The notes under the pieces are model-generated. The model did no database searches. It was not told the origin of the DNA and saw only the letters and a program-made list of their open reading frames with translations. A stretch of DNA of 64,000 bases from Ophelia neglecta (lineage: Eukaryota). Below, one piece after another: positions 1 to 25,245 of this stretch; the stretch's first letter is position 1; every line of letters starts with the position of its first letter. Made by a program: the position numbers and the translations under genes. The DNA lies in NCBI GenBank assembly GCA_965285935.1, contig OZ260662.1:17918001-17982000 (forward strand). Direction: 5' to 3'.

Positions 1-709
1 ATGAAACAGCTTGCCATTTAAACTTCAAGCATAAGTAAGCACATGACAATTTCATATTATATCTAATATGCGAGTATTAGTCTCGGTCCTGGTGACTCTT
101 AAATGCGTAATGTGTTATATCATTTCTAAGAAGAAAAACAGTCAACCTATTAAGCCGGAAGTGCCCTCCGAGATGCCCGTGTATGGTAATGACAGACTTC
201 AAGCCGTGCTATGCAAAGTGGCGGAACTATTGCGAAGAAGGCACAGCGTATCTTTTTAGACGTATTTTGAGATTATCACTATTAGTTTCTTGTATTACTG
301 TTCGATAATAGGTAATAACTAATGTCCGCGAGTACGACTCTCCCCCTTTCTAACCCTCCCATCCCCATGCTCGGGAATAATCTGCCTCATGTGTGGCTGA
401 AAAGTAACCGGGTTAATGTTGTACTCCCCAAGTTATTGAAAGCCTTTATTTTGGAATTCCAGCCAACAGTGACAAACAAACAATGTCCCCCACTGTATTC
501 CCTTAATAAATAAGAATCCAAGCTCATAAATTGTTGTCGCTTGGCGCTGTGAATGATTTGTCTATTTATAGTGTTTCTGGATTTCTAAGTAAATATAATT
601 CTTAAACTTAAATTTGCCGTATTTGTGAGTGACAAAACCGACAAAACAAGCTTGACATTCCCTGTTAATCTTTATAACAGCCAAACACAGTGTGTCCTGA
701 TAGGAATGC

Positions 710-2964: not shown

Positions 2965-5900
2965 ATGTGCAGGACACTGGCAGCAGTATGTTTGTACATT
3001 TGGATTGATTTCTATATGGCTCGGGACACAGCTGCCCTCTCTAATCTTGTTCATTCGGTGAGCAAGGCACTGGATGGTAGGTGGATTACATACGTACCTA
3101 CCGGTATTGTATGCAATTACTGATATATTTTCTTCTCATCACGTAAAATACCCTTGTAATTGAAATGTTAAATCAAACATCTTTGGACTTTATAGCATCG
3201 ATTTCATATTTATTTAGTGAGAATGCTACCTATATTTCTATGCATTCCCGTGTTTTTGAATTAGCAATAAAAAGTATAGAAATTGCAATGGTAAAATTGC
3301 TTAGACCCCTTCAAATGGTGCGAATAATAGTTAATTGCTTACTTTTACAATGTAGGAAGTAGGGATGTCTCTTTCTTGGCTTATAGTCTAATAGCGTTTA
3401 GCACAATGCCAATTAGTATTATCCCCGATAAAACTATACAGATTTTCACTTTTAACCATCCGTATTATACATACATTCCCAAATCGTTTCCTTTTCATTT
3501 ATGTTTTTACGTTGAAGATTATAGAGGCGTAAAAATCGTCAAAAGTTACTGTTTTTAAATGTAATTCACTAAACCACTGAAGACACTGTCTTTGCAGCAC
3601 AGATCACATGCAGTAACGAATGGTCGAAAACAGACATTTTATTGAGCAATATTTCAAGTTGATGGTTATTTAATGTTTACAAATATAAACAAACAGCAAT
3701 AGTTCACTGTTTCTTCAGTTTCTTGGGAAATATATCGGGAAAGCCAGTACACGTTTATGTTTGACGTACCACGGACTGTGGATTCAACCCGTAACAACGC
3801 CAATCGGTTTTGCCTTAGCCTGGGGGCGGCTCTTGTCTCAATTCAAACGAACGAGGAACTAGATTGGCTCAAAGATAGAATCAAACAAAATGTGGCGTCT
3901 ATCGGAGAAGAATTGGTTCACCAACAATGGTGGACATCTGGCAAATTCGACTACGGTATCTGGGCTTGGGATGACCAAAAACTTACTCCAGGTATGTAAC
4001 AAAGTATGGTTTTTTATGGTACCTTACCTTACTCTTCATTGGTCAGCAGTCAAGGTATGTGGTATTTAAAAAAGCAATTAAACGGCCTGTATTTATCATT
4101 ACCAGTGACTGTAACTGCATTGATGAAGCGCACACCAGGAAAGGAAGACCATCAGAACTTCTTGGCATTAACCCACAGTCATGAAAAATGGCGTTTAAGA
4201 GGATTTTCTCAGAACTATAAATTCAGATTTATTTGTGAAAAAGGTAATTCAAATGTCATTCTTTCTATTAGCATGTTACAGATTTAAACGTCCAAAAGAA
4301 TGTCGCTTTATTTGCTCCGTGAATGTCTGATTCCGAGGAGCTTTGATTATATATGCTGTTGGCCTATCAGAGCTGCCGGATGATAAGTTTGACCCAACTC
4401 TTCCCATTGAGACAAGGCTTATGAAACATCTTTCGCGGGAGTACGATGTGAGGGTGCGAGACTTCAAGAGACGTGATAAATCATTGAACCTTAAAATGTC
4501 CCTTGCTCTAAAAGGCATTTTAAAACTGGTAACTAAATTATTTCTCTGAAATCAACTGAGGTTTACGCCAATTTTACACTATGAAAGAAGGACACTGTTT
4601 ACATAAGTGAACAAATTGGCGTTTTATTTGTGGGTATAATATGAAAAAATTGTGTTTCTCCTTCGTGGAAAACCAATTTGGAATCTACTTCCACGTTGCA
4701 CTAACGGCTAGTAATGTCGATTGCAGCTGTCAAGGCTAATTGTACTTTTTATTTTGTGTTGAAGGACGAACAACGCCAGGTTTTGAGCACCGCTGCAAAA
4801 ATAAATATGGTAAGGCTTATATTCAATATATTTTTTTTGCATGTAGGTGTCCTGTTTGTTGTAAGATAGGTGGTCTATTTGGCTGCTTTATGGTGAATCT
4901 CATTTTAAGCGCGATATAGAAAAATATCATAAGGACACACGTTTGTTTGCCATAATGGGTTTGATAGTAAAGAGCTGTTCCCTTTGAATCTAACTATAAG
5001 GAATGGTTTGACGCGCAACTGACCTGGAGTCCCGTTGACTTTCACAACTTGTCTGTGGTTCACTGCCACCGAGCTGAGATCTGGGTCCCTGAGGTCCTCC
5101 TACTTAACAGGTGACCAACTGCAGCAATGGTCTTATATCGCAATAGGAGCGGCATATATTATTTAAAGACTAATTCATTGTAGTTGGAAAACAAATTAAA
5201 TTATTTATCCATTTACAGCTTAGATGATGACCCTTTAGGTAATAGAATCAAGGATCACATGTGGGTGACGGCAATGGGAGTTGTCCGATGGCAGCCTGAG
5301 GGCGTATTTCATACATCATGTCATGTTAAAATTCGTAGATTTCCTTTCGACGACCAGCTGTGCACAATCGTATTCGGCACAAATCACCAAAACCTCGTCA
5401 ATATAGAATTTAGCGTTTTGGATATTGGGATAGATATCACCAACATGAGACCAAATAACGGCTGGTATATAACAAGGCGAGTATAAGTGCTTTATTTTAT
5501 ATCTATTATCAAGTAGAAATGCAAAAAGGGACATTATATAATGAAGTGTATGCCTATGTCTTCAAAAATGTTTCTGCGTTAATGTTTTTTTAATTTATGT
5601 TCATGAACAGTATACGAATTGCAACAACAAAAAAACAATGCTGCCAAGAAGATGCGCCACCCGAGATGCATTTCACAATACATCTTAAACGCCGTAAAGC
5701 ATACTACATAGTTTCCCTGGTGATACCTTGTTCACTGTTGTCAGTTCTTCTATGGTTCAGCCTCTGGATGCCCTACAGATCGGAGGAGAAATTAACCTGT
5801 ATTTTGTCTGTTCTTCTGGCATTTTGTATAATACTCAATATGGTAGTCTCAGCTATTGCGAAGCAATCCGATGATATACCTTTGATAGGTAAGTCGGACA

Positions 5901-6811
5901 AAAAGAGAGTATATTGAAACAAACGCTTTTAGCATTATTTTGTGAACAATTGCTTTTAGGAAGTTTCAAGAAGGTCTCCTACTGAGAAATATCACCTATC
6001 TTCGCCTCTCAAAAAAAGCCTTGTCCTCTTCTTTTGATCAATGTATATACCTGTACACTCCGGTGATATAACGATTCTTCTTATTCTTTCCGATACCATT
6101 CCTACAACAGCTCATTTGAGTTTGTCTGACTAATTATTTTCTGTCTTTCCTTCGTCAGCCATCTTTGTTGTGTCCATGTTGGCAGTTGGGACGGTCGGAG
6201 CGTGCATTGCCATCCTTGTCACAGCCCTCCGACATCAAGACACGGTCAAAAAGTCCAGCACGTCGCGTGCCAATTTACTTCCCTGTTTTAAAAAAAGGCC
6301 CTCGCAACCTAAGATAGGCAGTATTAACATTGATTCGGCATGTAATCTTTACTCAGAGTGGCACAATCCATGCCTGCCTCAAGTACCATGCCAAAGCAAG
6401 TATCATAAAATGAATTCCACACACTGTGAAAGACGGGGAGCTAGTCGAGTAAGTTCTTACTCGTTCGACACACTGAGTGTGGAAGGTGAGACCAACTTTG
6501 ATGTCGAAGTGGATTATGATGTGATAAGTAAAGAGACGGGGACAACACGATCACAAGAACGTGTCTGCTACCAATCCCGCCGCTTAGACAATGCTTTCTT
6601 GGACAAAGAAATACTCTCGGTCCTTCAACGAACGGACCTCTTCAATTACAAAAAGGGAATAAACTCGAAGAATGCCAAAGACATTGATCACATTAAAGAA
6701 AAATCTGTGGGGGATTATTCTTTAGCAAGAAAAGTGGATTTTGTGTCATCATCGGTGCTGACGGTTATTTCACTAGTTGTTTTAATCACTTTACTATGTA
6801 TACCAGTTTGA
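2965..6811 (+). CDS. CTLD-fused nicotinic acetylcholine receptor-like (Cys-loop) ligand-gated ion channel subunit, 9 exons, 674 aa
   Basis: Manual splice model: 2965-3076, 3719-3991, 4106-4243, 4371-4528, 4765-4809, 5001-5110, 5219-5476, 5611-5888, 6159-6811 = 2025 nt, open throughout with matching intron phases. The introns are GT-AG except one GC-AG. Domains: CTLD (ANRFC..LVSIQTNEE..WWTSG..FICEK); ligand-binding domain (DEQRQVLS, EWFDAQLTW, IWVPEV, Cys-loop CHVKIRRFPFDDQLC, vicinal CC); M1-M3 (KRRKAYYIVSLVIPC, EEKLT..VLLAF, SDDIPLI); M4 (ARKVDF..LLCIPV). Exon 1 (weak signal peptide) is the least certain exon. Confidence 0.88.
3719..4243 (+). other. C-type lectin-like domain (exons 2-3 of the gene above)
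   Basis: SWEIYRESQY..ANRFCLSLGAALVSIQTNEELDWL..WWTSG..WAWDD and ..FRFICEK follow the CTLD pattern. Outer Cys pair present; inner Cys pair, EPN/QPD and WND motifs absent. Confidence 0.85.
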
Positions 6812-9850: not shown

Positions 9851-10113
9851 TAAAGTGTTGTCGAAGGCCTGTTATCATTATTATTATTATCATTAAAAAA
9901 AATTTCCATCCTCTAACGTCACTAGCCTGGCTCTTTGTATAATAAGACACTATTGTATTCGATGTTTGGTATAAAGCCGAAGGCTTTTTCATATATTGTA
10001 TATATCGAAATAAGCTTTACATACACTTGAAATGCTATTGTATTAGCAGAAATGGAGCATCCAGAGTAAAGAGTTGAATAAGTTATACATAAGATTGCCG
10101 AATAGAAAACATA

Positions 10114-10195
10114 TGGAATCGTTTGAATTTGAACTCACGTCTCCTAAGACACTGGTGCCTTAAACCATCGCTTTAGATCGCTCGGCTACGCTACC
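10114..10195 (-). pseudogene. tRNA-Leu(AAG) pseudogene
   Basis: 82-nt colinear match to the intact copy at 25164, with many substitutions in the T arm and acceptor stem; anticodon loop TTAAGGC. Confidence 0.85.
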
Positions 10196-10979
10196 CAGTT
10201 CACATACTTCGTGAAATCCTATTTCAAAACAACTTTGTGTGCATCTGGTTTATCTCATATTACTTTAAATTCATTCATTGTGATGAGAAAGAAAGGCAAT
10301 GAATGTGGGCTTCCCACTAGAAAACCTGGGTAATACAACTTCATTTATGATTTAACACAGTAGAGTAAAATTCGTTTTTAAAAACAAGAACAAATTGTAC
10401 ATAAACATTAGGTGAGTTACAGTAACACTGCATACAAATAACCATTATAGCGGTGCATTTAAAATTGGAACATAAACTTTTATCGTAAGGGTAAAATGAT
10501 AAGACTGTTTAGAAAGATATTGTGTGGGGAGTTCTTTAAATACAAGTATATCTATAACTTATTTCATTCATTAAGATTATTCCAAATTTAAACAGAGCGT
10601 GACGTTATGTGTGACGATAGCTTCCTAGAAAATGAGTCATGATGACATTGAAGGTGAACGGGATGGTAGGATTAATACCTGCCCGGTCGTTGTACCGACA
10701 AGAAATTAGCTTTGTATCAGCGAAAATATGTATATCATTTACGAGTACACTCGAAAATATAGCGATATATATACAGTATATACAAAAATAACTGACAAAT
10801 AAGTACAAAACAATTGGTTTAAAACCCCATTATAATGAAGGCTGAAGGCAATTACCTGCACCAAGAGGGAAATATATATTTCTTATTGTATATATCATTT
10901 GTTGGAATTGTGCAATTATATATTCATTATTTAAATCATATAGGGTTATATCCGTCCTTACCTACAAAATTGAGTGAAC

Positions 10980-11047
10980 AGCGGTCTAGGTCGATGGTTT
11001 AAGGCGCCTGTTTCTTTGGAGGCAAGGTTTGATTCCCACCGCTGTCA
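10980..11047 (+). pseudogene. tRNA-Leu(AAG) pseudogene, 5' end degenerate
   Basis: AGCGGTCTAGGTCGATGGTTTAAGGCGCC..GGTTTGATTCCCACCGCTGTCA. Confidence 0.75.
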
Positions 11048-11329
11048 TATATCTTTTACTCAATATTAAGGATATTTATCAGCTATCTTATTATAGGTTT
11101 CGGTCTGGATTTAACATACGTAAATCGTAACAGAAGAGTGTTTGCAATTAGGTGATTGATTGCATTATAGTCTGTCCCAGTATCCGTAAAAAAGCACATG
11201 TAATATTCAACATAGTTAGGTGATTGATATAAGTATATAGTATGATATTCAGTATTGGTGTCCAAAACCCTCGTAAAATTTGGCTTTATTTTCCTATGCC
11301 TTATCTTACGTTGAATGTAAGATAAGACA

Positions 11330-11488
11330 ATTTACTGCGTGGAATTAAACAATCCAAAAAACTGCGTGCCTTTACACTATTCGAGGAATAAGGCTTCTTA
11401 CCGCGTGGAATTAAAGGACGTGCGCAAGTAATTAGCCGACCTTCTGTGGGGAATTAAAATTTGCGCGAAATTATCAGCTTTTACCCTA
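11330..11488. mobile_element. MITE-like repeat, partial (family also at 53541, 54214 and ~63478)
   Basis: Ends GCGCGAAATTA..TTTACCCTA; internal GCGTGGAATTAA and TTAGCCGAC motifs shared with the other copies. Confidence 0.6.
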
Positions 11489-13351
11489 CCGATTTCTAGC
11501 CTGCTTTCAAGGATTGAAGGAAAAACTAGCATGAATCCTTGCTTTGAGGGGTTCCCACGCAATTTGTTAAGGAGGACAAGGCTATTGATCAGGCAGTTGT
11601 TCCCTTAGGAATTCACTAACAGAAGAAAATTTGCCATGGCTGTACTTCGACGCCAGTCTAGCAAAAACATTAACTGAATGATCACTCGTGCATCCTCAAG
11701 AGAATTCTAAACCGGATTGTGCAGAATGCATACCAGACTAAATGTGTATGCCGCCTTACTGAGCGCTCTAAGGCAAAAAAAAACTGGCTTCCTTAAATAA
11801 GTAAGTTCGAATCACTGTCGTTTTTGCTTTGCAAGCTTAGTTTTTCTTTTCTTAATAAGATAAATGTTTTTTTACTAGTATTTTCACATCATAGGAAAGA
11901 AAACCCCCGAATTGAAAAGCCAAAGTACTCGTATGATCAGCAGTCTAATACTTTTACCTGCCATTCGAACTGGATCACACTGATGTTGAGTGGCACTATT
12001 AAAGCATGACTTGTTAATTTAGCGTAATTCGATTTTATTCGATTGCACATTTCGTTGTTTATTATTGTGATTAATTAATTGGCTTTGTCTGCCGGGTATC
12101 CACTACCGTATTTGATAGATAAGAGTAATCGTGTTTAAACTTGTTGTGCATTAGTAACCAACAAGACCCTAAATGTTAAAGCTTTGTTAAACAATGGTCC
12201 TGCTGTTTTAAGCCATGGTATAATTTTATAAACATTTATTTTTTACACGGCGATGTTGCTTTAACCACAGTTAATCACATCAGCCGCATACATGTACCTT
12301 CAGAGGGACCTGAACTACATTTAAACCTCAACATTGTGAACAAAAAAACATAGAAGGTGAAAATAATTAATAAATCGACATACGGGGAATCCCACCAGTC
12401 TTAATTAGAGTAAACATACGATCGTTGACTCGCTGTTGGACTGTTCTTGGGTAGGTTCTAGTTGCCATTGTTTTAACACCTGCGCAGTGGTTCCGTGTGG
12501 TAAATTTTGCTCATCCAAGCGCTAGGCGCCATGTGCATCTGCTTCAGAGTGATATAAAATCGACTGTTGCCGATGATTAAAGATGTTTCCAGCTAAAATC
12601 CAATTACTTACAATGCCATTTTTGATATTATAATTAAAAATGACATTTCAGCTTTAACTTAACCAAATGACATTACATAGCATATATCCGTGGAAGTTTA
12701 GCCTGCTTGATAAATTTAATATAAGACATGCTTGTAAGACGATACTTGTCATCTTGCATATATAGAAACTGGTGTTCTGGTAAAAAATACTGCTAGCTCT
12801 AGTACATGTTATAGCGATGACATCGGTGATTCCAGGAGCGCGAACAAATAATTATCCCCTGGGAGCCGAATACTAGTGTCGTGTGATTATCAACACCTGC
12901 TATACTTCACGTTTATGGCCACTCTCTCGTCAAGCAAAACACTAATTTGCTATAGAGAGTCAAATTAGTAAATAATTCAGATACCTGACAAAATGTTTAG
13001 CATATAATATCCTGATCATTATTTCTTGAATGCAGCGTCGACAAGTTTTTGTGTGCGATTTGTTTTATTTTGATAATATATCATCGTCGAGTCGGTAGGT
13101 TTAAAAACATCACACTTCATGCGGCATTAATAATTCAACGGCTATAAGTCATTCAAACTTCGCCAGTAAAGCAACCATATAGTATGGAAAGGAGGTACAA
13201 ATGGATAGAGATTTATATTACTGTTTTATAAATTTAACGATAAGCGTGCTTATCAAAAAATGTTTATCAATTTTGTTTATTAAGGATTAATTATTAAAGT
13301 AATCACAGTATATCAAATAAGCATTAAGGGACCCCGGAGATCAGTTCCGTC

Positions 13352-13783
13352 GTGTTCGCTAGAGGGCGCGTCATGTATCATGCCGACCCACCTAATACTA
13401 CTGGTAGGGTTAAAATTAAAAATGGTGGAAAGCGGACAGCGAATGTAATAAGTAAACATACTTACATATCGAGGTGGACAGTGACCGATTGCCGGGAATA
13501 TTTGAAAGAACGGGATTATAACAATTCAGAATTGCGAAAAGCAGGACTTACGAAACCAACAGCCACGGTGAAGGCGCCAGATGCGCCGGTGTTCAAGGCA
13601 GATGATCACCTGCGTCTTGAAACTGAATTCCATACATGTGAAGATGATCGTAGAGATTTCAAAACGATCACCACGAACGCCACTACAAGTCTTAATATTC
13701 ATAGTTCTACTCCAGTAAAATTTACAAAAAATAGTATACGGCGATTGTCAGCTTACACTTCCATAACACATGTGTTGTTGTAA
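13352..13783 (+). pseudogene. Degenerate ORF with a SAP-like motif, probable transposon remnant
   Basis: WTVTDCREYLKERDYNNSELRKAGL resembles the SAP pattern (WTVxeLkxxLxxRG..SG.KaeL); the rest of the ORF is not recognisable. Confidence 0.35.
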
Positions 13784-14199
13784 ACAGCTGATTTTCTTAT
13801 CCCTACTTTTGGTTGGCGGTCAAATAGGCTATGTTGCCTAGTAGTTAAATTATCTCCGGGGAAACATATTTAGCTTGTTCCAATGACATTGGCCTCTACT
13901 GGATTGATGGCAGACCCACGTGACAACTAGTGGGGACACGACGTATTACGTCCTGGGCATGTTAAGTGCTAACTTCTCATGAAGAGCATTTAATAAGAGG
14001 GGTCGACACGACGACTTTGGTCAACGAGGCACATTTGCGTTGCTGTGAATATTATCGATACATGGAGTTCGGAAGCTAAATAGAAATCTACGCTGCTAAA
14101 GAAGAATGACTTTATAATATCCATTACGGAGCCACCTTAACAAAGGTCTGAACAAGGAAGACTGTAGATGACTTTCAAAGACGCCGAATATAAACGTTA

Positions 14200-17100
14200 T
14201 AGTGCGGTATGATGTGTCCAAATGGTGGGTCCCGTAGGAATTTTGTGCCAAAATTGATTTTTTTGTGGATTTGGTACTATTGTGAACCATATTAACTGAA
14301 AATTTTAGGGTCCAAATTTATCGAGCCGTGGAACCCTCTTTTTCAAAATGGCCGCCACCAATCAGGCTTTGAGTCATATCTCAGTAACTAATTGGAGGAT
14401 TTTAATGATTTTTGTGTCTAGATAGGGGTTTTTGAGGATGTTGAGTCTGATTATGAGGGTTCTGGACCTCTTAGAGGTAAAGTTCTTTAATTTGGATCAA
14501 AGGTTTGTGTAGGAGAGTGGGGCATAAGCATACAGCTAATATAACGCGGTGTTGTGGTGTACCAGTAACTCCACGAATTCATTGTAAAATGTTTAGGTAT
14601 CTATTATACATTATCAGCATCATGAACAATCAGTTTCTAAGACATTTCACACGCAAGGGCAAAATAAGTCTCAAACCTGAAAGTAACGTTTGCATCACTG
14701 AGGTAATAATGACGTCACTAGGTTTTGTCGTCATTTGGCATCCTTGTTTGGGTGAGCGTAACTACCTTGGCCTAAGTGACAGTGACGTCATTCTCGCCTC
14801 CGTACCACAAGAGTTACTTTACGGTTTGAGACTGTATTGCCCGTGCGAGTTATGCATATTCAAGGATGTTGGGGTTTAGAGAGGTGCCACTTAAGATGTT
14901 GTTGTGATGGTCCTGGCTTAATAAAGGTATGGAGTTCATTGATAGTCCCACCACAGAAACTTTTTGCTGGCCTTCACGGGTCTTCAATAAGGTTTTTTAG
15001 GCCCATATTATATTAAAATGGGGAGACATTGCAAAACATAGATTCACAACTAAGCCTAATTGGTTGAGTTATCACCATTGGAGCCAAATTTGGGGGAAAA
15101 CTCAGTAACTGCCTTACTGTTGTACAATTCCAAATGCATATAGTAACTATACAACCTCTTTGGATTAACCATTGTGTATGAACATTATAATCTAATCTAG
15201 TTTGTTACTATAGGTATTTGTAATTGTTCAACAGTAAAGACAATTATTGAGCTGAATTTATGTTAATACATTTCTAACGTTTCAGATCTTTGAGCAGTCT
15301 AACTCAACGCTGAGTGTGGTACAGTACAGTACCACACAATGTCTCAAGATATTTTGAATAGCTGTATTGTTTGCCTGGAAGGCGAATCATCGCTGAAACA
15401 TCTGGTTAGGAAACCCGATGTCAACAAAATTACTGATTTATTGGCATGTTGCAGAGAGCGTGTCTCACTAGGAGAGAATGAACTGAAGCCACTAGTGGGT
15501 CGTTTGTGTAGTTTAGATGAATTTCAGCTTCAGAATGTTCATTATCATAGTGAGTGTCGCAAGCCTATCGTGAATAAAGACCATTTAGAAAGAGCTAGAA
15601 AGAGGAAGCTTGATCATGCAGAATGTTTCTCTCCTCCGAATTTTGCTCCAAAAAAAGGGCCTGGCCGTCCTGGAAAATCCCAAGAAGGGACCCGTCCTAG
15701 GCGCTCGCAAGTTGTTCCAAAAGAGGTGAAATGTATATTTTCACCCTGTAAGTTTTGTGGTCCATCTGATTCACAGCAGCTCCATCGTGTCTTGAGTGAT
15801 TCTATGGGTCAAACTCTGCTTGATATTAAGAACAACACTGAAGACGATACCATTCGGGTATGTGTCTCTGGCTTGGAACAGGCAGGCGATGCTGCTGCCC
15901 AGGAAAAATATTATCACAGGGACTGCTTACGGCATGCTCAACGGACATTCTCAGACAGGATTGGTAAGGATGAGATGACTCGGGAGATTTGTGATGAATT
16001 GCTTCTCTTATCTGTCAAAACCTCATTCTCTGTTGGTAGTGTACTCAGTATGAACGAGATCAATGATGAGTATCTGTCAATTCTTGAAGAGTATCACATA
16101 GAACCGCTTTATTGTGGCAACCATAAAAAGTACCTAAAAGAGTTGATTCAAGAGTACTTTCCTCAGGTGGAGTTTGTCAAATCTGTTCGTAAAAAGGAAA
16201 TTGACAGAGTGATCTTATCAAAAACTGTCAACCGGGCAGTTGAACATGCTACAGCACAGAATACTTCAGTCAATGCTTTGGCTTGCTTGGCAAATGCACT
16301 GAGAGATGAGATTTTGAGTAATCGAGATTGGAAATTCAGTGGTGACTTGAATAATTTCCATAATCCCCCTATGTTGCAATTCTTTCTCAACCAACTCTTA
16401 TTTGGACCTCATGTTAAAAGGGTTACTGGTAGACGAGATATTGAAGTGCAAAAAACTGTTGATGTTGCATCTCAAGTCCTGATGCAAAACACACGCAGTG
16501 ACAGGCAGGTCAAATATTAACCCAAATATGATGGAGGATTCAGGCGTGATGGAGTTGAAACACCACTGTCAATTGGACTCCCCCTCTCTGTTCATTCCCG
16601 GGTGCGTGACAAAAGTCTTATGACAAATCTAACAACTCTGTACATTGGAAGTGACTACCAGCACATACTCAACATTGAAAAGCGGATTGAACATGCTGTG
16701 CTGACGAGGATGCAACATGCTGGAGGATTTAGTCTCCCTGACTTTGTGAAGAAGGGTGTAAATGTTTGGTTTGCTCTAGACAACATTGATCTTCTTGAAG
16801 ATACTCCTTATGGACAGAATACCTTCCATGGAACACTTGTTGTCCTTAATCAGAGGGAGGCTAAGAATGCTGAACCAATCAATACCCCTCTAGTAATCCC
16901 AGACTCAGTCCCATCTGAGCCTCTCCAAGTTAAGATCAATTATCTTGAAGAACCAGTGATACAGCTAAGACCAATCCATTTTGATGAGTACACATTTGGC
17001 CAAAGAGACCATCTGTTACCCAAATACAAGCACTATACGCACACATGGGCACTCACCAACTTCCTTGCTAATAAAACACTTCAACCACAGGTTTTTGTTT

Positions 17101-20100
17101 TACCAGATGCAATTGGAGAAGCATCAACCCTTCAGGAAACTCCTGAAGATCATATGGAGGACCTAGGCCCTGATGACGTGCAAAGCCAAGGTGAAGTGAC
17201 TCCATCCCCTGCTGACTCAGTTGAATCATCTGCTTCCTGCCAGGATACCACAACTACCTTACGTCCAATCCTTCAAGTGAGGAATAGAATTGGCAAAAAA
17301 GAAAAACTTGAGAAACAAGATGTAATGCCAACATGGGCAGCAACAAAGTCTCTTCTGTTATCTACACAAGGACATGTTGAGGTCTCTAGGGTAAACTCTG
17401 AGGTTATTGCACCTCTTTTCAAAACTTCTCCCACTGACTTTGCCACACTATACACAGTTTTGAGCCTCACACAAAACATATCTGCCATCATTGTGGGACC
17501 TGAGAAACGCACACTTATAACACTTGACCTTGATCTGTACAGTCGTGCAATCAAGATTCAAGAGTCTGTTCAAAACAAGAACTGGGTCCTGAGAGCTGGT
17601 ATCTTACATATTGCGTTTGCTTCACTGCATGCCCTGGGAAAGACCGTTGAAGGCAGCGGTGCTGATACATGTGCCATTGAAAGTGGTATCTACTCCTCTG
17701 CAGCACTCAGAGGAATTTAAAGTGGCAAAGCATTCAAGAGGGGCATGGAGTACCACATCATTAATGCCCTGGCCATCATGATGATGAAGTTTGATGCTAT
17801 TATTGGAGAAGAGCAATCTGGACCTCTGCAAGTGCAATGTGTAGAGTTTAAGCAGGCCCTACATGAGCGAGATCCTAAAATGGTTGCTATCTTCAATGAT
17901 ATTCAGTCACACTACAAAGCTCAAATCCATGAGAGACGGACTGAGTTAGATGTTGGTGAGCTGGGAAGATTTCTTGACCAATACCTTGAACAAATTGAGA
18001 GCTTGTTACTGCTGATAGGTGCATGTAGGCAAGGAGATTGGGAGGGGTACCTTGCAGCACTAGATAATCAAATAAAATACTTTTTCACACATGACCTTCT
18101 CAACTATGCAAGATTGATGCCATTCCATGTGGATCAAATGAATGCACTGGAGAAAGATGATCCACTGACATGGGAAGCCCTCAAGTCTGGAGAATTTGTT
18201 GTGAACAAATCTAATATTCCATTCACAAGCTTGTTCACTGACCAGACCTTAGAGCAAGAGATTAAGGGCTTGAAAAAACATGGAGGGATTGTTGGACTCT
18301 CTCAAGATGAAGGTTCTTTGGATCGGTTGCTTAACACCACACCTCACTTGGCTCGGATCATCAAGCAATTCTTGCTCAGCTTTCCTCTCCCCTCTGGGAG
18401 CTCTACCAAATCAGATGATCACTATCAGCTTTCTGGAAATATTGCCCTGCGATCTGCTCAGAATGCTCTTAAACTCAGAGACTCTTTACATCTCCATTGT
18501 AAGGGGAACCCCTATGTCACTGGAACACCTTTAAAGAGCATTGTCTCCTCGGCACTCATCCCAACCAAAGCTTAACAAGACATCCTCAGCTTTGCAAAGC
18601 AGGGACAAGAGCGGTATCAGGACTTTGTCATAGATCGTCTTCTCAAACACTCCAAATTGTCCATCTGGGACAATATGAAAAAACTGAAACTGAAGACCTT
18701 CTTCAATTGGATGGTGAAGTCCCGGGTGACAGTTGGTGACAAGGTTATCAAATTGAGGGAGGAGCGCCAGCTGCTTGCACGATTTCTGGTGATTCAGCAA
18801 TCCCGGCCGGAGTTAGTGCCCAAACTGGAAACTACGATTGGCATGTATGAGCTGGCTGTGGTGCCACGCTCTATGTTTGCAATCGATGGCTCTTTGCTCC
18901 TCTGCACAGACAAGGCACACCTCATGCATGTTATTGAAGAAGCTGTTCGCTCTTCCCCTACCACTGACCGGACCTCTGAATTACAAGTTCCAACTACCTG
19001 TGTACAGATAATTGATGCCATGGCTGTGTTGCAGTGCATGAAAAAATCACCTGGCATGACAAAGATATATCATCTCAAGGAAGCTTTCATCACACGTATA
19101 AGCAGAATGTCAAATGGCTATGCTGAGGTGAGGATAATTTTTGACCGCTATATCGAAGGGAGCCTGAAAGCAAAGACAAGGGCAAAAAGAGCAATTTCTG
19201 TTGCAGCTGCTAGTGCCAGCTATGAAATTCATGATGAAATGAGCATAAGCACCATTTCACTGAAGGAGCTTCTGTCATCCTCTAACACAAAGAAGGGACT
19301 TTGTGAACTCTTGGCTCAAGCTTTGTTGGAACACTTTGAAGGTTCCCTGAAGCAGGTCATGGTCATCTACAACACTCTAGTGCAGGTCAATTCCCCTCAT
19401 TCTGTTGAAGAAAACTTCAAAACCCATGGCCATGAGGAGGCTGACACTTTAATTCCTCTCCATGTTATTGACAGTGTCCGTGATAACACATTCAAGGAAA
19501 TCCATGTACGGTCCCCTGATACAGATGTGTTTATTCTTTTAATGGATCTCGCCTCCAATGGACACCTTGGCGCTCTTACTCAACTGAAGTTCTGCACTGG
19601 CACAGGTGCCAAATACAGAGAAATAGATGTGCAAAAATGTGTGCAGGTAATCAGTCAACACAAGTCGCAGGGTCTCGTAGGCTTGCACAACTTAACTGGA
19701 GCAGATTGGGGAGGGAAGTTTGTGGGAATTTCGAAGAAACGCTGGGCTGATGTGTTTCTCTCACTAGGAGATGATAATCCCATCATTGAGAGCTTCCGCA
19801 GCCTTGGAGAAGGATCCTTGTCATCTTTGGAGTTGGTGAATGGAGACCTCCCACAAGAAGAAAAAGCTTTAGAAACTTTTGTCTGTAATGTATACTCACC
19901 AAAGGGTCCTACAACTTTGCCCGCACTCCGTTGGGAGCTCTTCCGATCCAAAAACCTCGAGGCTGAGATGCTCCCTCCCACCCGCACCTCGCTTATGCCC
20001 CATATTGTCCGCACTAACTTTATATGCATGCGAGACTAATCATATATCTCACCAAATCCACGCCTTCCTGCATTGGAAGAGAATGGATGGTTGCTTGAAG

Positions 20101-20851
20101 AAGGAGTTTACATTCCATTGAAATGTCTAGCGGCCCCTGCTCCTTCTGCAGTTCTTCAGCTGGTTAAATGTGGATGCCGAACATTGTGCAAAGGAAATTG
20201 CTCCTGCACCAAAAACAAACTGTCCTGCACCCCCCTGTGCAAATGTTTCTCTGCAGGATGTGACAATTTCTCTGATTACCACATGCAGGACAGTGATGAT
20301 ACGGATGACCATTAGCTATAAGGCTGTATAGTTAGTGTTAGTTTGCGCTCTTTTAGTAAATCATAGAGTGATCTTCTATTTTTGTGTGTTTTCCCATTTC
20401 TGTTTACACTATATATATATTTAGTGCTTGCATTAGTATGAAGTATTGAAAATTGTAGTCCTTGTATAGTACTTTGGTTGGAGTAAATTTTTGACTTAAC
20501 TGAAAAGTGGTTATATATTGAGTTTCTTTTGCAGCTGTGACCTTGATTTTGGTAAAATTACCCTGTCCCCTTCCTCATAGCAATATGGAAACTTCACAAT
20601 CAGACTCAGCATCCTCAAAAACCCCTATCTAGACACAAAAATCATTAAAATCCTCAAATTAGTTACTGAGATATGACTCAAAGCCTGATTGGTGGCGGCC
20701 ATTTTGAAAAATGGCCGAAAAAGAGGGTTCCACGGCTCGATAAATTTGGACCCTAAACTTTTCATTTAATATGGTTCACAATAGTACCAAATCCACAAAA
20801 AAATCAATTTTGGCACAAAATTCCTACGGAATTACACATAAGCCTGCACTA
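14200..20851 (+). mobile_element. Academ-superfamily (XPG-type) DNA transposon, full length, 6652 bp
   Basis: Termini TAGTGC..GCACTA; 3-bp TSD TTA (14197-14199 and 20852-20854); long, near-identical inverted repeats ~14232-14452 vs ~20600-20829; internal transposase-XPG-Cys8 reading frame. Confidence 0.88.
15339..20315 (+). pseudogene. Academ transposase/XPG-like nuclease/Cys8 finger protein, 1659 codons, 4 premature stops
   Basis: Five track ORFs (15339, 16602, 17745, 18657, 20073) lie in one frame, separated only by single TAA codons. Motifs: DNIDLLEDT, TLDLDLY, GILH, DQTLEQ; FEN1/XPG-like IIDAMA, IFDRY, HEEADT, SPDTDV, TGADW; C-terminal CGCRTLCKGNCSCTKNKLSCTPLCKC. Confidence 0.85.
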
Positions 20852-20854
20852 TTA

Positions 20855-20885
20855 TGACAGCGGTGGGATTCGAACCCACGCCTCG
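20855..20885 (-). pseudogene. tRNA-Leu 3' fragment (T arm plus acceptor strand)
   Basis: Plus strand TGACAGCGGTGGGATTCGAACCCACGCCTC, followed by the conserved tRNA 5'-flank block at ~20916. Confidence 0.8.
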
Positions 20886-21591
20886 GAATGGATTGACAAT
20901 ACAAGCTATACTTGTGATAAGGCTGCTGTTATGGATATCCAATACATTGGACAACAACATTTACGTCACATCGAAAAATTAACTTCTCATAATACAGTAG
21001 GGGACATTTACTGCAATTCACTGAAGGTAGGCGCAATATGACTCTTTCAACTCAAAGTTTCAAATCAAAATTTCGATTTGTATGATAATTAATATAAAAT
21101 GCCCATCTGATATATTTCATATGCATTTTAGTATATCCTTTGAAATGTTGAAGAAAAAATTCAGGTTGAAATCCTTTAATTCCTAACAATGGATTACACT
21201 GGCAAAATAGAAGAATATAATCAAAATTTTGTGGTTACACTGTTGAGAAGTATCCTGTAATAAACATGAAGAAGAATACATACCTAATACTAATAAGGTT
21301 AAGCTTGGGTTAATAGTCCTGAAGTATTGACGTAATAACTAAATTAATTTCCAAACAAATGGATTAAGAAAGTTAGGAATAAAGACTTAATGCCATAAAC
21401 TATGCGAAAATGTGTACGAAATATAGGGTCGACATCAGCTTGGTATTATTAATAAACATAAATATAGTAAATGTGGATTGTTAGTTTAGTCAATACATTG
21501 TTAGTGAAATTATTGGTGATGTTTGTAGGAACTGTCAAATTGCAACTTCATTGTTGGAATCGTTTAAACTTTTATATATTTGTATCACTAA

Positions 21592-21650
21592 GGTAGCATG
21601 GCCTATCGATATTAGACGCTGGTTTTAGGCACAAGTCTCTTCGGAGACGT
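21592..21650 (+). pseudogene. tRNA-Leu(TAG) pseudogene, 3' truncated
   Basis: GGTAGCATGGCC..CGCTGGTTTTAGGCACAAGTCTCTTCGGAGACGT. Confidence 0.8.
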
Positions 21651-24629
21651 TTATGGTATCAGTCAGAGTCACCTAAATATTCAAATATGTATATTCTTCT
21701 CCCCTGTACAACACAGCATGCCCAATAAATCACTCTCCCATATAAGGAATGTGTTTGCAAAGTGACTGATATATTTAAAAAAAAGTGTAAAGTGACAATA
21801 TTGCAGCTTAGGTAATATATTCAAGGCTACAATTCAGTCCTTGTTGCATGCGCTGTCAGATGTACAACGATATTACATGTATCATTTGGCCATGCTATTT
21901 CCTGCCTGGAAATAATACTGACATAGGACAAATGCCTCTGCTCTCGCGCTAATGTTTTAGGTGCACACTGAAATTGTTCAACCATGGTTGCAGCAAGTGA
22001 TATGACAATCATGCCGTATTTGCTAACCAATCATCTGATGAATAACCAGTATTGCAATTAACCTTTTCGTATGCAATGAATGACCTTTTTGATTCAGCTG
22101 ATGTTTTGATACTACAATAAAAGACAATTGTCCTAGGAATATGTATACAAAGTGTCTGGTGTAAAGAGAATATTAATATCATTTAGGCATATTTCTATCG
22201 AAAAGCAGTGGATACCAGAAAGTCAAGCAATGTCATTTTTTCCAGTGTATTATTAAATCGATTCGAAATCATCCAGAATCGTCAGCTGCCATGCCTGGCA
22301 CGATGTACACTGTCCACTCGGGGGAAATTGGTAACTATTAGCATATGAAAAAGGCGACACGAATAATAGTAAAAGTATTATTAAATCAAGAATCGCCACC
22401 TGCAGGCCCACAAACAACCATCGGCACCCTAGCAGCAATTAGGATGAACATAAATTGAGCATACCAAAAGAATATTTTATATCACCGTGCAAGGAGAAGT
22501 ATTCAATAGTTTTGTAAGATGTTCAAGTTAATGATTTCTAGCAAAGTATGACAACACGAAAGTGGATAAGGCACCTGACATTGTCCATAAGATTCTTGCT
22601 TGTCCAATCCGTTTGATATGTTATATATATTTTATAAAATGCATACTCGCATCATTATAAATCTACTTACGTTGATGTCAAGTACTTCATATTTGTAACG
22701 AAAATCATCACCGATTACGATACGCAATGGATAATAGTTGCCAGCAAAGTTCACCATACAATTTTGGTGGTGCATCGGAGTAATATTGCGCCAGATTATA
22801 TGCGCTTTGAATGTATCGAACTTCATTTTCCGACTATCTTCAATTTACAGCTTTTACGGTACCATTTACCTTGTTATACTTCATATTGTAATGTCTCTCC
22901 GATACGTATCATTTTACATAATAGTACTAGTACACAATACTACCTATCAGTAAGTATTCACGATTCAGATTATGTTCACAAATATCAAAAGAGTTTATCA
23001 GAGCCGTAAATCATATTACTGCTATTATGTTTTATTCTGGAAGTGAATATTGTTTTTCACGTCGTTTCATTGCCATCGGTTGTTTTCGATAAACCAAATC
23101 TATATCTATCGCGCAACGCTCAGGGAATAATGGTTCTAATACATAGAAAAATGATGCTAACATTCAAATCCAGGCAATCATCTTTTGATCCAATGAGTTT
23201 ATCGTTTACATTAATGGAACTGGTTTATTTTATACTCATTTCTTAATATCGATGGTATGTACCCATATTCGATATACCTTATGGTAAAGAGTGATAATAT
23301 CTGCCGTTATGTTTTTAACGACTAGGCCTTAGGTCAGTCAGATCTCCGAATTTAGTATCCAATATTATCTTAATTCTAAAGGTAGGTTTAACTTTATTGA
23401 TCACTATTTCAATGGTACGAGTGATATCCAATATTAATTTTGATGCATATCACTCGCCATATACTGTCCGCACTGACCGGAAAAGCGGTACAAGCAATAT
23501 GGTCATATTGCTTTATTTGTTGACCGTCGAGTAAAGTTCCTGCTATGAAGATTTTCATTCCGGTTAAGCATTGAATCGCCCAACAAATTTTCGGACCACC
23601 AAATGAATGTTGCCAGGTTCTTGCAATTGTTTCCTTTTTGCAGATTATTAAATTGCGGCTCTGTTGTGGGATGGTATAGTCTGTATGATTTAATGGGCGC
23701 TTCGAAAATGTAGCTGGAGACAATAGGTCTACAACCTTCTGAGAAGGCTTAATTAAAGCACTTTTATAGATGCCATCAATATCCCTGTTGAAATATTAAA
23801 CCAATTACAAATAGCTCCGGCTGAGGCTCACGTAAATATAAAGATATAGCTGAATTTGCAAACGGTTTATTTAATGAGCATTATGTCAATTACATGGTAA
23901 TAGGCATAGCCATTCATGTAATAGAAACCTCTAACGATATTGATTTACATAGTAGTACCCGCCAGTACTAGCAGTTAAAAAATCACTTTAACTCCAGGGC
24001 AGGCAATACTTGCTTGATCAAACACTGGCAGGCTCGCAAGCATATATCCGTTTATATATCAAGAAACAACATAGATGCATCTTCTGAAATTGGGAGTGGA
24101 TTAACGGAAGACAAAGCCAAATCTTTAGTCGAGAATCATAGGTAGCATGGAATTACATCAAAACTGCTATTTTCCGACATGTCATCTGAAAAATGTTGCC
24201 CCTTGAACTGGTAAATATCCAGAACATTGGCCCTTCGAAGGCTTATACTAGCTGGTGCCTTTGAGCCTAAGTTGTTATGCAAAGAGTTTTGCTCTCTTTG
24301 GTCTGCCATAAAGCCATAAAGCCGTCAAGAAAACAAAATAATTGAATTTGCAAAAAGAAAGCGTAGCCTCGCAGCTGAAGGTTCACCTTGTCTACGGACA
24401 TTTCTTGGAATTTTCTTGATTAACGATTCAAACGAGTCTGCCGTTTATCAACTCTTGCTGCTGTACAAAGTTCTGAAAGCGGTTCTCAACACACGTGTTT
24501 TACGAAAACATTTGAATAGGGCATTGTGATACAATGATGTGTTGGAAGGCCAATTCAAATTTGCCATTCATGATCACCTTCTGTTTTGGCCTTTGCCTGG
24601 TTGAAAAAAAAAACCGTATAAAAGTTGAT

Positions 24630-24711
24630 AGGCAGCGGTGGTATTCGAACCCACGCCTCCCTAGTTACTGGTGCCTCAAACCAGCGGCTTACACCACTCG
24701 GCCTCGCTACC
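24630..24711 (-). pseudogene. tRNA-Leu pseudogene with mutated GAG anticodon
   Basis: 82-nt colinear copy; anticodon loop TTGAGGC; variable arm and D region substituted. Confidence 0.8.
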
Positions 24712-25163
24712 CTTAAACATCAGCATTTGATTCTATGTAAACTTTAAACAACTTATTTTTGAGATAAGCCTGCTGTTGTTGACACAACACATTGAACTTT
24801 ACTATTTACAGTACATCGTAAAGCTCGCATTTTACGTCATGGCAGTAAGGACCCGAGCTTACTAGCATTGGTGATATCATAAAACAAATTATGATCTAAA
24901 CGTAGACCACCGCATTGCAATAAAGTATTTGATAATTTTGGTTTGTTGTAAGTCAATGGCGCTATCAAAGTGAGTGATTAATTGCATACGTAAAAGTAAA
25001 GGCAACAAAACAATCGTACAATAATGGTTCTTTTTGTAAACATATTTTACTCTGTTTCCAGACGTTTCAAAGTGCAGGAAGATAGTAGGAAATAATGTCT
25101 GGTTATATGAACATATACAAATATCGTAGTTGTTTATAGTTATATCATTAATGCTACTCCAAG

Positions 25164-25245
25164 GGTAGCGTGGCCGAGCGGTCTAAGGCGCTGGTTTTAG
25201 GCACCAGTCTCTTCGGAGGCGTGGGTTCGAATCCCACCGCTGCCA
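25164..25245 (+). tRNA. trnL-TAG: tRNA-Leu, anticodon TAG, intact
   Basis: GGTAGCGTGGCCGAGCGGTCTAAGGCGCTGGTTTTAGGCACCAGTCTCTTCGGAGGCGTGGGTTCGAATCCCACCGCTGCCA: A and B boxes, long variable arm, full cloverleaf; TTTT terminator at 25250-25253. Confidence 0.97.

What the first reader, a model, noticed from the sequence alone, without database searches (positions are those of the whole stretch)
2965..6811. C-type lectin domain fused to a Cys-loop (nAChR-like) ion channel in one intact gene
Seen: three consecutive phase-1 GT-AG introns join a signal-like exon, two CTLD exons and the first ligand-binding-domain exon into a stop-free 674-aa frame. The CTLD-to-channel intron is only 127 bp (4244-4370), leaving no room for a separate promoter, and the channel part has no signal peptide of its own. 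Known: canonical nAChR subunits have only a signal peptide before the ligand-binding domain. Inference: a homopentamer would display five CTLDs above the vestibule, giving a candidate contact-chemosensory, immune-recognition or matrix-anchored channel. I cannot tell without a search how often this architecture has been reported.
Basis: partly seen in the sequence, partly recalled or inferred. Interest (0 to 1): 0.92.

Follow-up and report, generated by a model that had tools for sequence, protein, structure and literature searches.

The report
Lectin-like domain built into nicotinic-type channel
This is an intact gene for a nicotinic-receptor-type ion channel subunit with an extra lectin-fold domain ahead of its ligand-binding domain; the layout is kept in six genes of this genome and in at least two other species, and I found no paper describing it.

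Summary
Exons at 3719-3991 and 4106-4243 encode a divergent C-type-lectin-like domain (CTLD). They join through phase-1 introns to seven exons of an alpha-type nicotinic (Cys-loop) subunit. The CTLD-to-channel intron is 127 bp, and the channel part has no start codon of its own.

It is not a chance adjacency. Five more loci on the same chromosome keep the same exon order, exon lengths and phases, and all are intact. Capitella teleta and an unnamed ENA contig have the same junction. The CTLD is the slowest-evolving part of the protein. It has lost one disulfide and all calcium/sugar-binding motifs. The acetylcholine aromatic box is also gone, so this is an orphan cation-channel subunit.

Weak points:
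- No RNA data exist for this organism.
- Exon 1 is not settled; a second candidate lies at 68-185.
- One intron of the window copy needs a GC donor.

No paper in the searchable library reports this architecture. The only named database protein is a truncated Capitella model. I read it as a new variant of a known receptor kind. The CTLD most likely docks on a conserved partner; this function is inferred, not shown. The scan had not noted this fusion elsewhere.

The parts
2965..3076 (+). Unverified.
   Evidence: ATG, a hydrophobic stretch and the donor G|GTAGGT. There is no Pfam hit and no homologue in the paralogues. Its aromatic-rich hydrophobic core resembles the first exons of pA and pB, which are supported by pA-pB homology. 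Two non-synonymous SNPs fall in it.
68..185 (+). Alternative candidate exon 1 (39 codons, cleaner signal-like start, phase-1 donor G|GTAATG). It would make intron 1 3533 bp long.
   Evidence: It ends in Tyr plus a split codon, as do the first-exon candidates of pA, pC and pE. pB ends in Asp and pD in Asn, so this is suggestive only.
3719..3991 (+). Exon 2: N-terminal two thirds of the CTLD (phase 1 in, phase 1 out).
   Evidence: Lectin_C 21.4 bits. It is 61-70% identical to six other copies in the genome. A profile of the copies hits only CTLDs in the PDB.
4106..4243 (+). Exon 3: C-terminal third of the CTLD, ending ...ICEK with a phase-1 donor.
   Evidence: It is 67-69% identical in the paralogues and 49% identical to Capitella. 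It has no EPN/QPD/WND motif and lacks the C2-C3 cysteines.
4244..4370 (+). The 127-bp phase-1 intron that joins the CTLD to the channel.
   Evidence: The homologous introns are 114-250 bp in the paralogues and about 170 bp in the ENA contig L020.
4371..4528 (+). Exon 4: a linker of about 12 residues and the N-terminal helix of the ligand-binding domain.
   Evidence: Neur_chan_LBD profile positions 1-39. It is 158 nt in five of the six loci and 161 nt in pC. No ATG lies upstream in frame.
4765..4809 (+). Exon 5 (45 nt): beta1-beta2 region of the ligand-binding domain.
   Evidence: It is 45 nt in all loci.
5001..5110 (+). Exon 6 (110 nt): loop D and loop A region.
   Evidence: Neur_chan_LBD 30.7 bits. 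The loop A position reads LLN rather than the usual YN (read against the canonical motif).
5219..5476 (+). Exon 7: Cys-loop (C-x13-C with FPFD) and loop B. It ends at a GC donor.
   Evidence: Neur_chan_LBD 43.3 bits. The closest solved chains are all nAChR subunits. The GC donor is shown; the paralogues have GT at this site.
5611..5888 (+). Exon 8: loop C with the vicinal Cys-Cys, then M1 and M2.
   Evidence: Neur_chan_memb 28.4 bits. The best PDB match is human alpha-7 (E 6e-12), with the CC pair, the -1' Glu and the 9' Leu aligned.
6159..6811 (+). Exon 9: M3, the cytoplasmic loop, M4 and the stop codon.
   Evidence: It is homologous to exon 9 of all paralogues at 22-39% identity.

Best explanation
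The stretch is one intact gene of a conserved, probably annelid, subfamily of nicotinic-type Cys-loop channel subunits.

Shown:
- A two-exon, phase 1-1 cassette encoding a C-type-lectin-fold domain sits between the leader exon and the first helix of the ligand-binding domain.
- The channel half has everything a cation-selective pentameric channel subunit needs: the Cys-loop, a vicinal Cys pair in loop C, four membrane segments, Glu at -1' and Leu at 9' of M2.
- It lacks the aromatic residues that bind acetylcholine.
- The CTLD has lost the C2-C3 disulfide and every calcium/sugar-binding motif. It is nevertheless the most strongly conserved part of the protein.

Inferred:
- The mature subunit carries the CTLD on a linker of about 12 residues at the top of the extracellular domain.
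- There the CTLD binds a conserved protein or matrix partner, for localisation, clustering or assembly, or it modulates gating.
- The divergent ligand pockets of the six paralogues respond to different, non-acetylcholine ligands.
- The fusion arose once, before the split from the Capitella lineage. It then expanded to six copies in this genome.
For: The gene model is stop-free with canonical splice sites.

Within this genome:
- All seven copies of the CTLD exon lie directly upstream of nAChR exons, on the same strand.
- Exon lengths are 273/138/158/45/110/258/278 nt, with identical phases. pC, pD and pE depart by a few bases in exons 4, 7 or 8.
- Five loci translate without a stop from exon 2 to exon 9. 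In the sixth, pD, every exon has an open frame, but its full model was not checked.
- The intron between CTLD and channel is 114-250 bp at five loci. In four of these the channel frame has no upstream ATG.

Selection among paralogues:
- Synonymous sites are saturated (pS 0.63-0.92).
- dN is 0.11-0.26 in the CTLD, 0.22-0.56 in the LBD and 0.51-0.95 in exon 9.

Other species:
- Capitella teleta ELT88907.1 carries Lectin_C (27.5 bits) plus the start of Neur_chan_LBD in one model. Its locus has exons 2-9 colinear.
- The ENA contig L020 has the same ...ICEK|G phase-1 junction and an intron of about 170 bp.

Domain identity:
- An AF2 model of the Capitella homologue matches only CTLDs, Z up to 8.2 over residues 59-200.
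- The channel exons match only nAChR subunits in the PDB, with alpha-7 best.

Origin:
- In an exon-8 tree the six genome copies form a clade (support 100/99) with Capitella as sister (86/90). One origin of the fused state is compatible with the tree.

Polymorphism:
- DNA contigs of other runs show indels only in introns, and no stop or frameshift in exons.
Against: - No RNA run exists for this organism, so the 4243/4371 junction has never been seen in a transcript.
- Exon 1 is undecided.
- The window copy needs a GC donor at 5477.
- It shows 8 non-synonymous against 5 synonymous polymorphisms and is the most divergent family member, so its constraint may be relaxed.
- The CTLD call on the window's own exons is just under Pfam's threshold. 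It rests partly on the Capitella homologue.
- The AF2 model is confident only for about half of the domain.
- The proposed role of the CTLD is inference from conservation alone.
- The joined protein was neither searched nor folded.
Confidence: 0.8

Rival explanations
1. The CTLD cassette is optional. Exon 1, exons 2-3 and exon 4 all meet in phase 1, so skipping exons 2-3 would give an ordinary nAChR-type subunit. The gene may make both forms. This can hold together with the main explanation.
For: The cassette is symmetrical in phase, 1-1. At locus pD the cassette is tandemly duplicated at 99.5% identity and stays in frame, which shows that it behaves as a movable module.
Against: The CTLD is under stronger purifying selection than the rest of the protein. 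It must therefore be translated often enough to matter. No transcript data exist either way.
Confidence: 0.25
2. The family is real, but the window copy is a decaying or non-functional member.
For: It has a GC in place of the GT donor found at the same site in the paralogues. Its polymorphisms run 8 non-synonymous to 5 synonymous. It has the lowest CTLD identity to the other copies, 63-69% against 73-84% among them.
Against: The frame is fully open over 674 codons. All other splice sites are intact. No indel falls in any exon in three DNA runs. The GC donor sits in a near-consensus context (AAG|GCGAGT). The key residues are kept: the Cys-loop, the CC pair, the -1' Glu and the 9' Leu.
Confidence: 0.08
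3. These are two neighbouring genes, a small secreted CTLD protein and a separate nAChR gene, wrongly joined by reading splice sites into the sequence.
For: Read-through of the exon-3 donor reaches a stop after 14 codons, so a stand-alone CTLD product is formally possible. The Capitella annotation splits the locus into two models.
Against: - The first Capitella model itself already joins the CTLD to the start of the LBD.
- The channel half has no start codon or leader, and the gap is only 114-250 bp at the loci measured.
- The phase-1 donor after ICEK and the acceptor of exon 4 are kept in six loci and two other species.
- No copy of this CTLD type occurs away from a channel in the genome.
Confidence: 0.04

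Closest known systems
Canonical alpha-type nicotinic acetylcholine receptor subunits (best solved match: human alpha-7)
   Same: Neur_chan_LBD and Neur_chan_memb domains, a Cys-loop with FPFD, a vicinal Cys pair in loop C, Glu at -1' and Leu at 9' of M2, and the 45-nt and 110-nt exons.
   Different: There is an extra folded domain of about 135 residues before the ligand-binding domain. The aromatic box is lost: loop C Tyr positions read Lys and Ala by alignment to alpha-7, and loops A, B and D were read against the canonical motifs.
Expanded orphan nAChR-like subunits of lophotrochozoans (Jiao et al. 2019, PMC6896357)
   Same: It is a lineage-specific expansion of divergent nicotinic-type subunits with altered ligand sites in a spiralian genome.
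   Different: [quoted passage not shown] A term search of its text found no mention of a lectin or of an added domain.
Capitella teleta hypothetical protein CAPTEDRAFT_208916 (ELT88907.1, UniProt R7TBP4)
   Same: It is the same CTLD subtype followed by the start of Neur_chan_LBD. The locus is colinear with exons 2-9 here. It is sister to the clade of this genome in the exon-8 tree.
   Different: The model is a truncated 377 aa, named only as a C-type lectin domain protein. The rest of the channel is annotated as a separate 178-aa gene. There is an extra linker exon and a longer intron before the LBD. It is not mentioned in any searchable paper.
Prokaryotic pentameric channels with an added N-terminal domain (DeCLIC; PMC9897478)
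   Same: It is a pentameric ligand-gated channel subunit with an additional folded extracellular domain ahead of the ligand-binding domain. In DeCLIC that domain is described as modulatory.
   Different: DeCLIC is bacterial, its N-terminal domain is unrelated to CTLDs, and it has no Cys-loop. The resemblance is one of layout, not of descent. I read only that paper's abstract.
Extracellular scaffolds and N-terminal domains of other ionotropic receptors (C. elegans LEV-10/LEV-9/OIG-4 for acetylcholine receptors; the amino-terminal domain of ionotropic glutamate receptors). From my own knowledge, not tested here.
   Same: These are extracellular protein-binding modules that position or assemble ionotropic receptors. 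That is the role I infer for the built-in CTLD.
   Different: In nematodes the modules are separate proteins. In glutamate receptors both the fold and the channel family are different.
Non-sugar-binding CTLDs (NK-cell receptor type, Reg3/PAP type)
   Same: The fold matches and the calcium/sugar motifs are absent. Reg3-alpha is the best sequence match of the Capitella domain. NKp80, CLEC5A and NKp65 are among the best fold matches.
   Different: The C2-C3 disulfide is replaced by a Phe/Tyr pair. WIGL is replaced by WWTSG. There is a long conserved helix segment (…GEEFAHQQWWTSG). The domain is fused to an ion channel.

Membership tests
Cys-loop / nicotinic receptor subunit family | Neur_chan_LBD domain above Pfam's threshold | tested here: met
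   Exon 6 scores 30.7 bits and exon 7 scores 43.3 bits; the cut-off is 26.
Cys-loop / nicotinic receptor subunit family | Cys-loop: two cysteines 13 residues apart, with the FPFD motif | tested here: met
   C-HVKIRRFPFDDQL-C in exon 7, kept in all paralogues.
Cys-loop / nicotinic receptor subunit family | Four transmembrane segments (Neur_chan_memb) | tested here: met
   Exon 8 scores 28.4 bits; the cut-off is 28.1. M1 and M2 align with alpha-7. M3 and M4 are seen as hydrophobic stretches at the two ends of exon 9 (direct reading).
Cys-loop / nicotinic receptor subunit family | Closest relatives are nAChR subunits, not GABA, glycine or 5-HT3 subunits | tested here: met
   All listed PDB hits (the best 60 of 70 and of 73 matches) for exons 7 and 8 are nAChR subunits.
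Alpha-type, acetylcholine-gated nAChR | Vicinal cysteines in loop C | tested here: met
   QCCQ aligns with the ECCK of alpha-7. The CC pair is kept in all paralogues.
Alpha-type, acetylcholine-gated nAChR | Aromatic box (loop A Tyr, loop B Trp, two loop C Tyr, loop D Trp) | tested here: not met
   The loop C tyrosines align with Lys and Ala. Loop A reads LLN and loop B reads FGTNHQN where the canonical motifs are YN and GSWTYD (read against motifs known from the family).
Cation-selective pentameric channel | Glu at -1' and Leu at 9' of M2 | tested here: met
   SEEKLT...VLL aligns with SGEKIS...VLL of alpha-7. pC has Gln at -1'.
C-type lectin-like domain (Pfam Lectin_C, CTLD fold) | Pfam Lectin_C above the gathering score | tested here: inconclusive
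   Window exon 2 alone scores 21.4 bits against 22.6, and it holds only profile positions 4-46. Exon 3 alone gives no hit. The joined domain was not searched. The Capitella homologue scores 27.5 bits over positions 4-107.
C-type lectin-like domain (Pfam Lectin_C, CTLD fold) | CTLD fold | tested here: met
   Tested on the Capitella homologue only. All 50 best of 48,161 chains are CTLDs, Z 8.2 to 4.7, spanning residues 59-200. The model is confident only for residues 60-130 and 189-196.
C-type lectin-like domain (Pfam Lectin_C, CTLD fold) | Two core disulfides (C1-C4 and C2-C3) | tested here: not met
   The domain has only two cysteines in every copy. C2 and C3 are replaced by Phe and by an Asn/Tyr position in the alignment to Reg3-alpha.
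Calcium-dependent sugar-binding C-type lectin | EPN or QPD motif plus WND motif | tested here: not met
   None of these motifs occurs in any of the five copies checked. The WND position reads WRL.
Prokaryotic NTD-bearing pentameric channels (DeCLIC type) | Homologous N-terminal domain | tested here: not met
   The added domain here is a CTLD. The resemblance is in layout only.

The most novel reading that the evidence does not exclude
The ring of CTLDs is itself the sensor. Binding of a protein, glycan-free surface or matrix ligand to the built-in CTLD would open or tune the pore. That would make this an ionotropic receptor for macromolecular or contact cues, or a matrix-tethered mechanosensitive channel, and so a mode of gating not known for animal Cys-loop receptors.
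Probability: 0.1. Interest if true: 0.9.

Novelty: new variant of a known kind. Interest (0 to 1): 0.75.

Why it matters
To my knowledge, animal Cys-loop receptors are described as having only a signal peptide ahead of the ligand-binding domain. The one family review I checked describes them that way.

A conserved subfamily with an extra folded extracellular domain, held under stronger constraint than the channel itself, is a natural experiment. It shows how a pentameric channel can be coupled to an extracellular partner. It parallels the N-terminal domains of bacterial channels such as DeCLIC and of glutamate receptors.

It offers a tractable system:
- express the subunit with and without the CTLD;
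- look for the CTLD's partner;
- solve the pentamer.

It also shows that automated annotation misses or splits such genes, as happened for Capitella. The architecture may therefore be under-counted in spiralian genomes.

Tried and rejected
- **RNA evidence.** Laying them gave colinear genomic contigs and no joints. Splicing could not be observed.
- **Joined model.** All searches were exon by exon, by reference. Joining was done only inside scripts, to check frame and stops. No pentamer or full-subunit model was therefore made, and complex prediction was not used.
- **The search for homologous proteins** with the Capitella CTLD region found only itself and one unnamed 236-aa fragment. Its length limits (207-660 aa) exclude full-length fusions.
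- **Profile search of 1.84 billion representatives.** It gave 164 hits. Of the proteins whose Pfam domains I scanned, only the Capitella protein carries both domains. The other strong full-length matches are single-exon ORFs from unnamed eukaryotic contigs or multi-CTLD proteins. I did not scan all 150 listed.
- **Metagenome contig scan** with the exon-2 profile confirmed nothing.
- **Contigs L014-L019** carry exon-2-like ORFs, but no channel exon was detectable within reach. Their architecture is unknown.
- **Exon 1.** A heuristic scan and cross-paralogue tblastn support first exons for pA/pB and pC/pD, but they do not decide between 2965-3076 and 68-185 in the window. An apparent shared terminal Tyr is not general.
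- **dN/dS ratios** could not be computed properly because synonymous sites are saturated. Only the ordering of dN is used.
- **Organism.** I did not identify it myself. 'Annelid' rests on earlier notes of this scan and on Capitella being the only named relative.
- **Literature.** Seven full-text searches and term searches within two papers found no report of the fusion. The library does not hold most subscription journals.
Full report
**1. The observation**

I rebuilt the gene from the raw sequence. The nine exons are 2965-3076, 3719-3991, 4106-4243, 4371-4528, 4765-4809, 5001-5110, 5219-5476, 5611-5888 and 6159-6811. They give 2025 nt, 674 codons and a single terminal stop.

The first three introns are GT-AG and phase 1. 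The intron between the lectin-like part and the channel part is 127 bp.

The next GT would break the frame.

Every search was made exon by exon, by reference. The joined protein was not searched or folded.

**2. What the exons encode**

Pfam, exon by exon:
- Exon 2: Lectin_C, 21.4 bits against a cut-off of 22.6. It covers profile positions 4-46 only, because the domain is split over two exons.
- Exons 4, 6 and 7: Neur_chan_LBD, at 15.1, 30.7 and 43.3 bits.
- Exon 8: Neur_chan_memb, 28.4 bits.

In the PDB, exons 7 and 8 match only nicotinic receptor subunits. Human alpha-7 is the best match for exon 8. That alignment places the vicinal Cys pair, the -1' Glu and the 9' Leu of M2 on their alpha-7 counterparts. 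The two loop C tyrosines fall on Lys and Ala. Loops A and B also lack their aromatic residues (read against the canonical motifs).

The channel half is therefore an alpha-type, probably cation-selective, orphan nicotinic-family subunit.

**3. Is the fusion real or a chance adjacency?**

This is the central question, and RNA cannot answer it. The only runs holding the stretch are three DNA runs of one sample. Their contigs are colinear with the genome, introns included. I therefore used comparative evidence.

Within this genome:
- A search with exon 2 found seven copies, all on the same chromosome, at 61-70% identity and without stops.
- After fetching the surroundings, every copy proved to lie directly upstream of nicotinic-type exons, on the same strand and in the same order e2-e9.
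- This gives five further loci: about 14.11, 14.46, 14.59, 17.86 and 18.30 Mb of contig C2.
- Exon lengths are 273/138/158/45/110/258/278 nt, with differences of a few bases at pC, pD and pE in exons 4, 7 or 8. Splice sites sit at homologous positions with identical phases.
- Five loci translate without any stop from exon 2 to the end. At the sixth, pD, every exon has an open frame, but I did not check its full model.
- The intron between ...ICEK and the first channel exon was measured at five loci and is 114-250 bp. At four of the five, the channel frame closes within 5-14 codons upstream and holds no ATG.
- No copy of this CTLD type occurs without a channel behind it.

In other species:
- A profile of exon 2 was run against 1.84 billion protein representatives. 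It found one named protein with the full domain: Capitella teleta ELT88907.1 / R7TBP4, 377 aa.
- That protein scores Lectin_C at 27.5 bits over the whole profile, and it also carries the start of Neur_chan_LBD.
- Its locus has e2, e3, e4, e5, e6, e7, e8 and e9 colinear over about 9 kb. The annotation cuts the gene in two, with a separate 178-aa LBD/TM model downstream.
- The phase-1 boundaries on both sides of the CTLD cassette are kept in Capitella.
- A 347-kb contig of an unnamed eukaryote (ENA ERZ21781341, locus L020) has e2, e3, e4, e6, e7 and e8 in order. It shows the same ...ICEK|G phase-1 donor, an intron of about 170 bp and no upstream ATG.

**4. Selection**

Among the five complete loci, synonymous sites are saturated (pS 0.63-0.92). 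Non-synonymous divergence is far lower and is ordered as follows:

| Part | dN | aa identity |
|---|---|---|
| CTLD | 0.11-0.26 | 63-84% |
| Ligand-binding domain | 0.22-0.56 | 36-64% |
| Exon 8 | 0.30-0.61 | not tabulated |
| Exon 9 | 0.51-0.95 | 22-39% |

The added domain is thus the most constrained part of the protein.

In the DNA contigs of the other runs, all three indels fall in introns. The 13 exonic differences in e2-e9 are 5 synonymous and 8 non-synonymous, with no stop. This is compatible with a live gene. It also hints that the window copy is less constrained than the family as a whole.

**5. History**

Own-genome searches with exons 7 and 8 rank the fused loci as each other's nearest relatives. 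The nearest non-fused gene by exon 7, on contig C5, has a different intron pattern. It has no CTLD exon within 13 kb upstream of its exon 6.

A maximum-likelihood tree was built from exon 8 (88 columns):
- The six loci of this genome form a clade with support 100/99.
- Capitella is their sister, with support 86/90.
- All eight fused sequences lie on one side of a branch in the best tree and in 74% of bootstrap trees.

The fusion is therefore older than the split from the Capitella lineage. The six copies here are a later expansion. A single origin is compatible with the tree but is not proven; the short ENA sequence is poorly placed.

The cassette is symmetrical in phase (1-1), which is the classical signature of exon shuffling. 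This agrees with note s1-748443. At locus pD it has been duplicated again in tandem, at 99.5% identity, and stays in frame.

**6. The lectin-like domain**

Sequence evidence:
- The exon-2 profile and the Capitella protein hit CTLDs almost exclusively in the PDB: DEC-205, PLA2R, mincle, NK receptors and Reg3-alpha.

Fold evidence:
- An AlphaFold2 model of the Capitella protein is confident for residues 60-130 and 189-196 and weak for the long-loop region.
- Searched without Foldseek against 48,161 chains, its 50 best matches are all CTLDs, with Z from 8.2 to 4.7.

Departures from the canonical domain:
- There are only two cysteines, C1 and C4.
- C2 and C3 are replaced by a conserved Phe and an Asn/Tyr position.
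- WIGL is replaced by WWTSG.
- There is no EPN, QPD or WND motif in any copy.

The domain has the fold but almost certainly not the calcium-dependent sugar binding. 'Lectin' is a misnomer for its likely function.

**7. How it most likely works**

Shown:
- One open frame.
- A conserved junction.
- A channel half with all structural hallmarks of a cation-selective pentameric subunit, but without the acetylcholine box.
- A CTLD under the strongest constraint in the protein.

Inferred:
- After removal of the leader, the CTLD sits on a linker of about 12 residues above the N-terminal helix of the ligand-binding domain.
- The CTLD hardly changes among paralogues whose ligand pockets differ strongly. 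I therefore think it binds one common partner, for anchoring, clustering, assembly or trafficking. It may also modulate gating, as the added domain of the bacterial channel DeCLIC is described to do (PMC9897478, abstract only).
- Ligand diversity would reside in the classical pocket.
- A diversified immune or contact-chemosensory role for the CTLD itself fits the conservation pattern poorly.
- The cassette is phase-symmetric, so an isoform without it is possible and untested.

**8. Open points**

- **Exon 1.** It resembles the first exons I could support for pA and pB by mutual homology. A second candidate at 68-185 has a cleaner signal-like start and an equally good donor. Neither has a detectable homologue. 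First introns of 1.3-10 kb occur in the paralogues, so distance does not decide. Either way the architecture stands.
- **The GC donor** of the window copy.
- **The organism.** I did not identify it. Earlier notes of this scan call it an annelid (s1-740750, s1-733642). That fits Capitella being the only named relative.

**9. Novelty**

Seven full-text searches, plus term searches within the lophotrochozoan nAChR expansion paper and the pLGIC evolution paper, found no mention of a lectin or any added domain on an animal Cys-loop receptor. The Capitella accession appears in no searchable paper.

The library lacks most subscription journals, and I could not query InterPro architectures. 'Unreported' is therefore provisional.

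I class this as a new variant of a known kind: a familiar channel family with a new, conserved extracellular module. The scan had not noted the fusion elsewhere in this genome.

Noticed in passing
G000:C2 about 14,463,700-14,465,700 (minus strand; loci L005/L006): At paralogue pD the two CTLD exons are tandemly duplicated: at least 811 bp at 99.5% identity, with identical proteins. The cassette is phase 1-1, so the product could carry two CTLDs in a row. It could also be an assembly or haplotype artefact.
   Followed up: partly
G000:C2 about 18,304,800-18,305,000 (paralogue pC, minus strand): The 114-bp intron between the CTLD and the channel is open in frame, so retaining it would add 38 residues and not break the protein. 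pC also has Gln in place of Glu at the -1' position of M2.
   Followed up: no
window 68-185: A signal-like open exon (39 codons) with a phase-1 donor lies 3.5 kb upstream of exon 2. It is a rival first exon for this gene.
   Followed up: partly
window 15339-20039 (+): Four consecutive long ORFs (393, 372, 276 and 460 aa) lie in a stretch with higher GC. None has a Pfam hit at E <= 0.001. Unexplained.
   Followed up: no
window 32730-41000 (-): Pieces of a BEL/Pao retrotransposon (Peptidase_A17, DUF5641).
   Followed up: no
G000:C2:17983230-17983487 (minus strand, about 1.2 kb beyond the window's end): Another nicotinic-type gene, 42% identical to exon 8. In the exon-8 tree it falls outside the clade of this genome's fused copies.
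   Followed up: partly
L013 (Capitella teleta KB311628.1, locus positions 10001-25667): The public annotation splits what looks like one CTLD-channel gene into a 377-aa 'C-type lectin domain' protein and a separate 178-aa LBD/TM model.
   Followed up: partly
Proteins P0002-P0013, P0024 and others (unnamed ENA, JGI and Logan contigs): Roughly a dozen of the unnamed single-exon ORFs (the ten I aligned or read) share the family motif ...QWWT[SA]G. All run out at the same place as exon 2 here, so the intron position inside the CTLD is widely conserved. Their organisms, and whether a channel follows, are unknown.
   Followed up: partly
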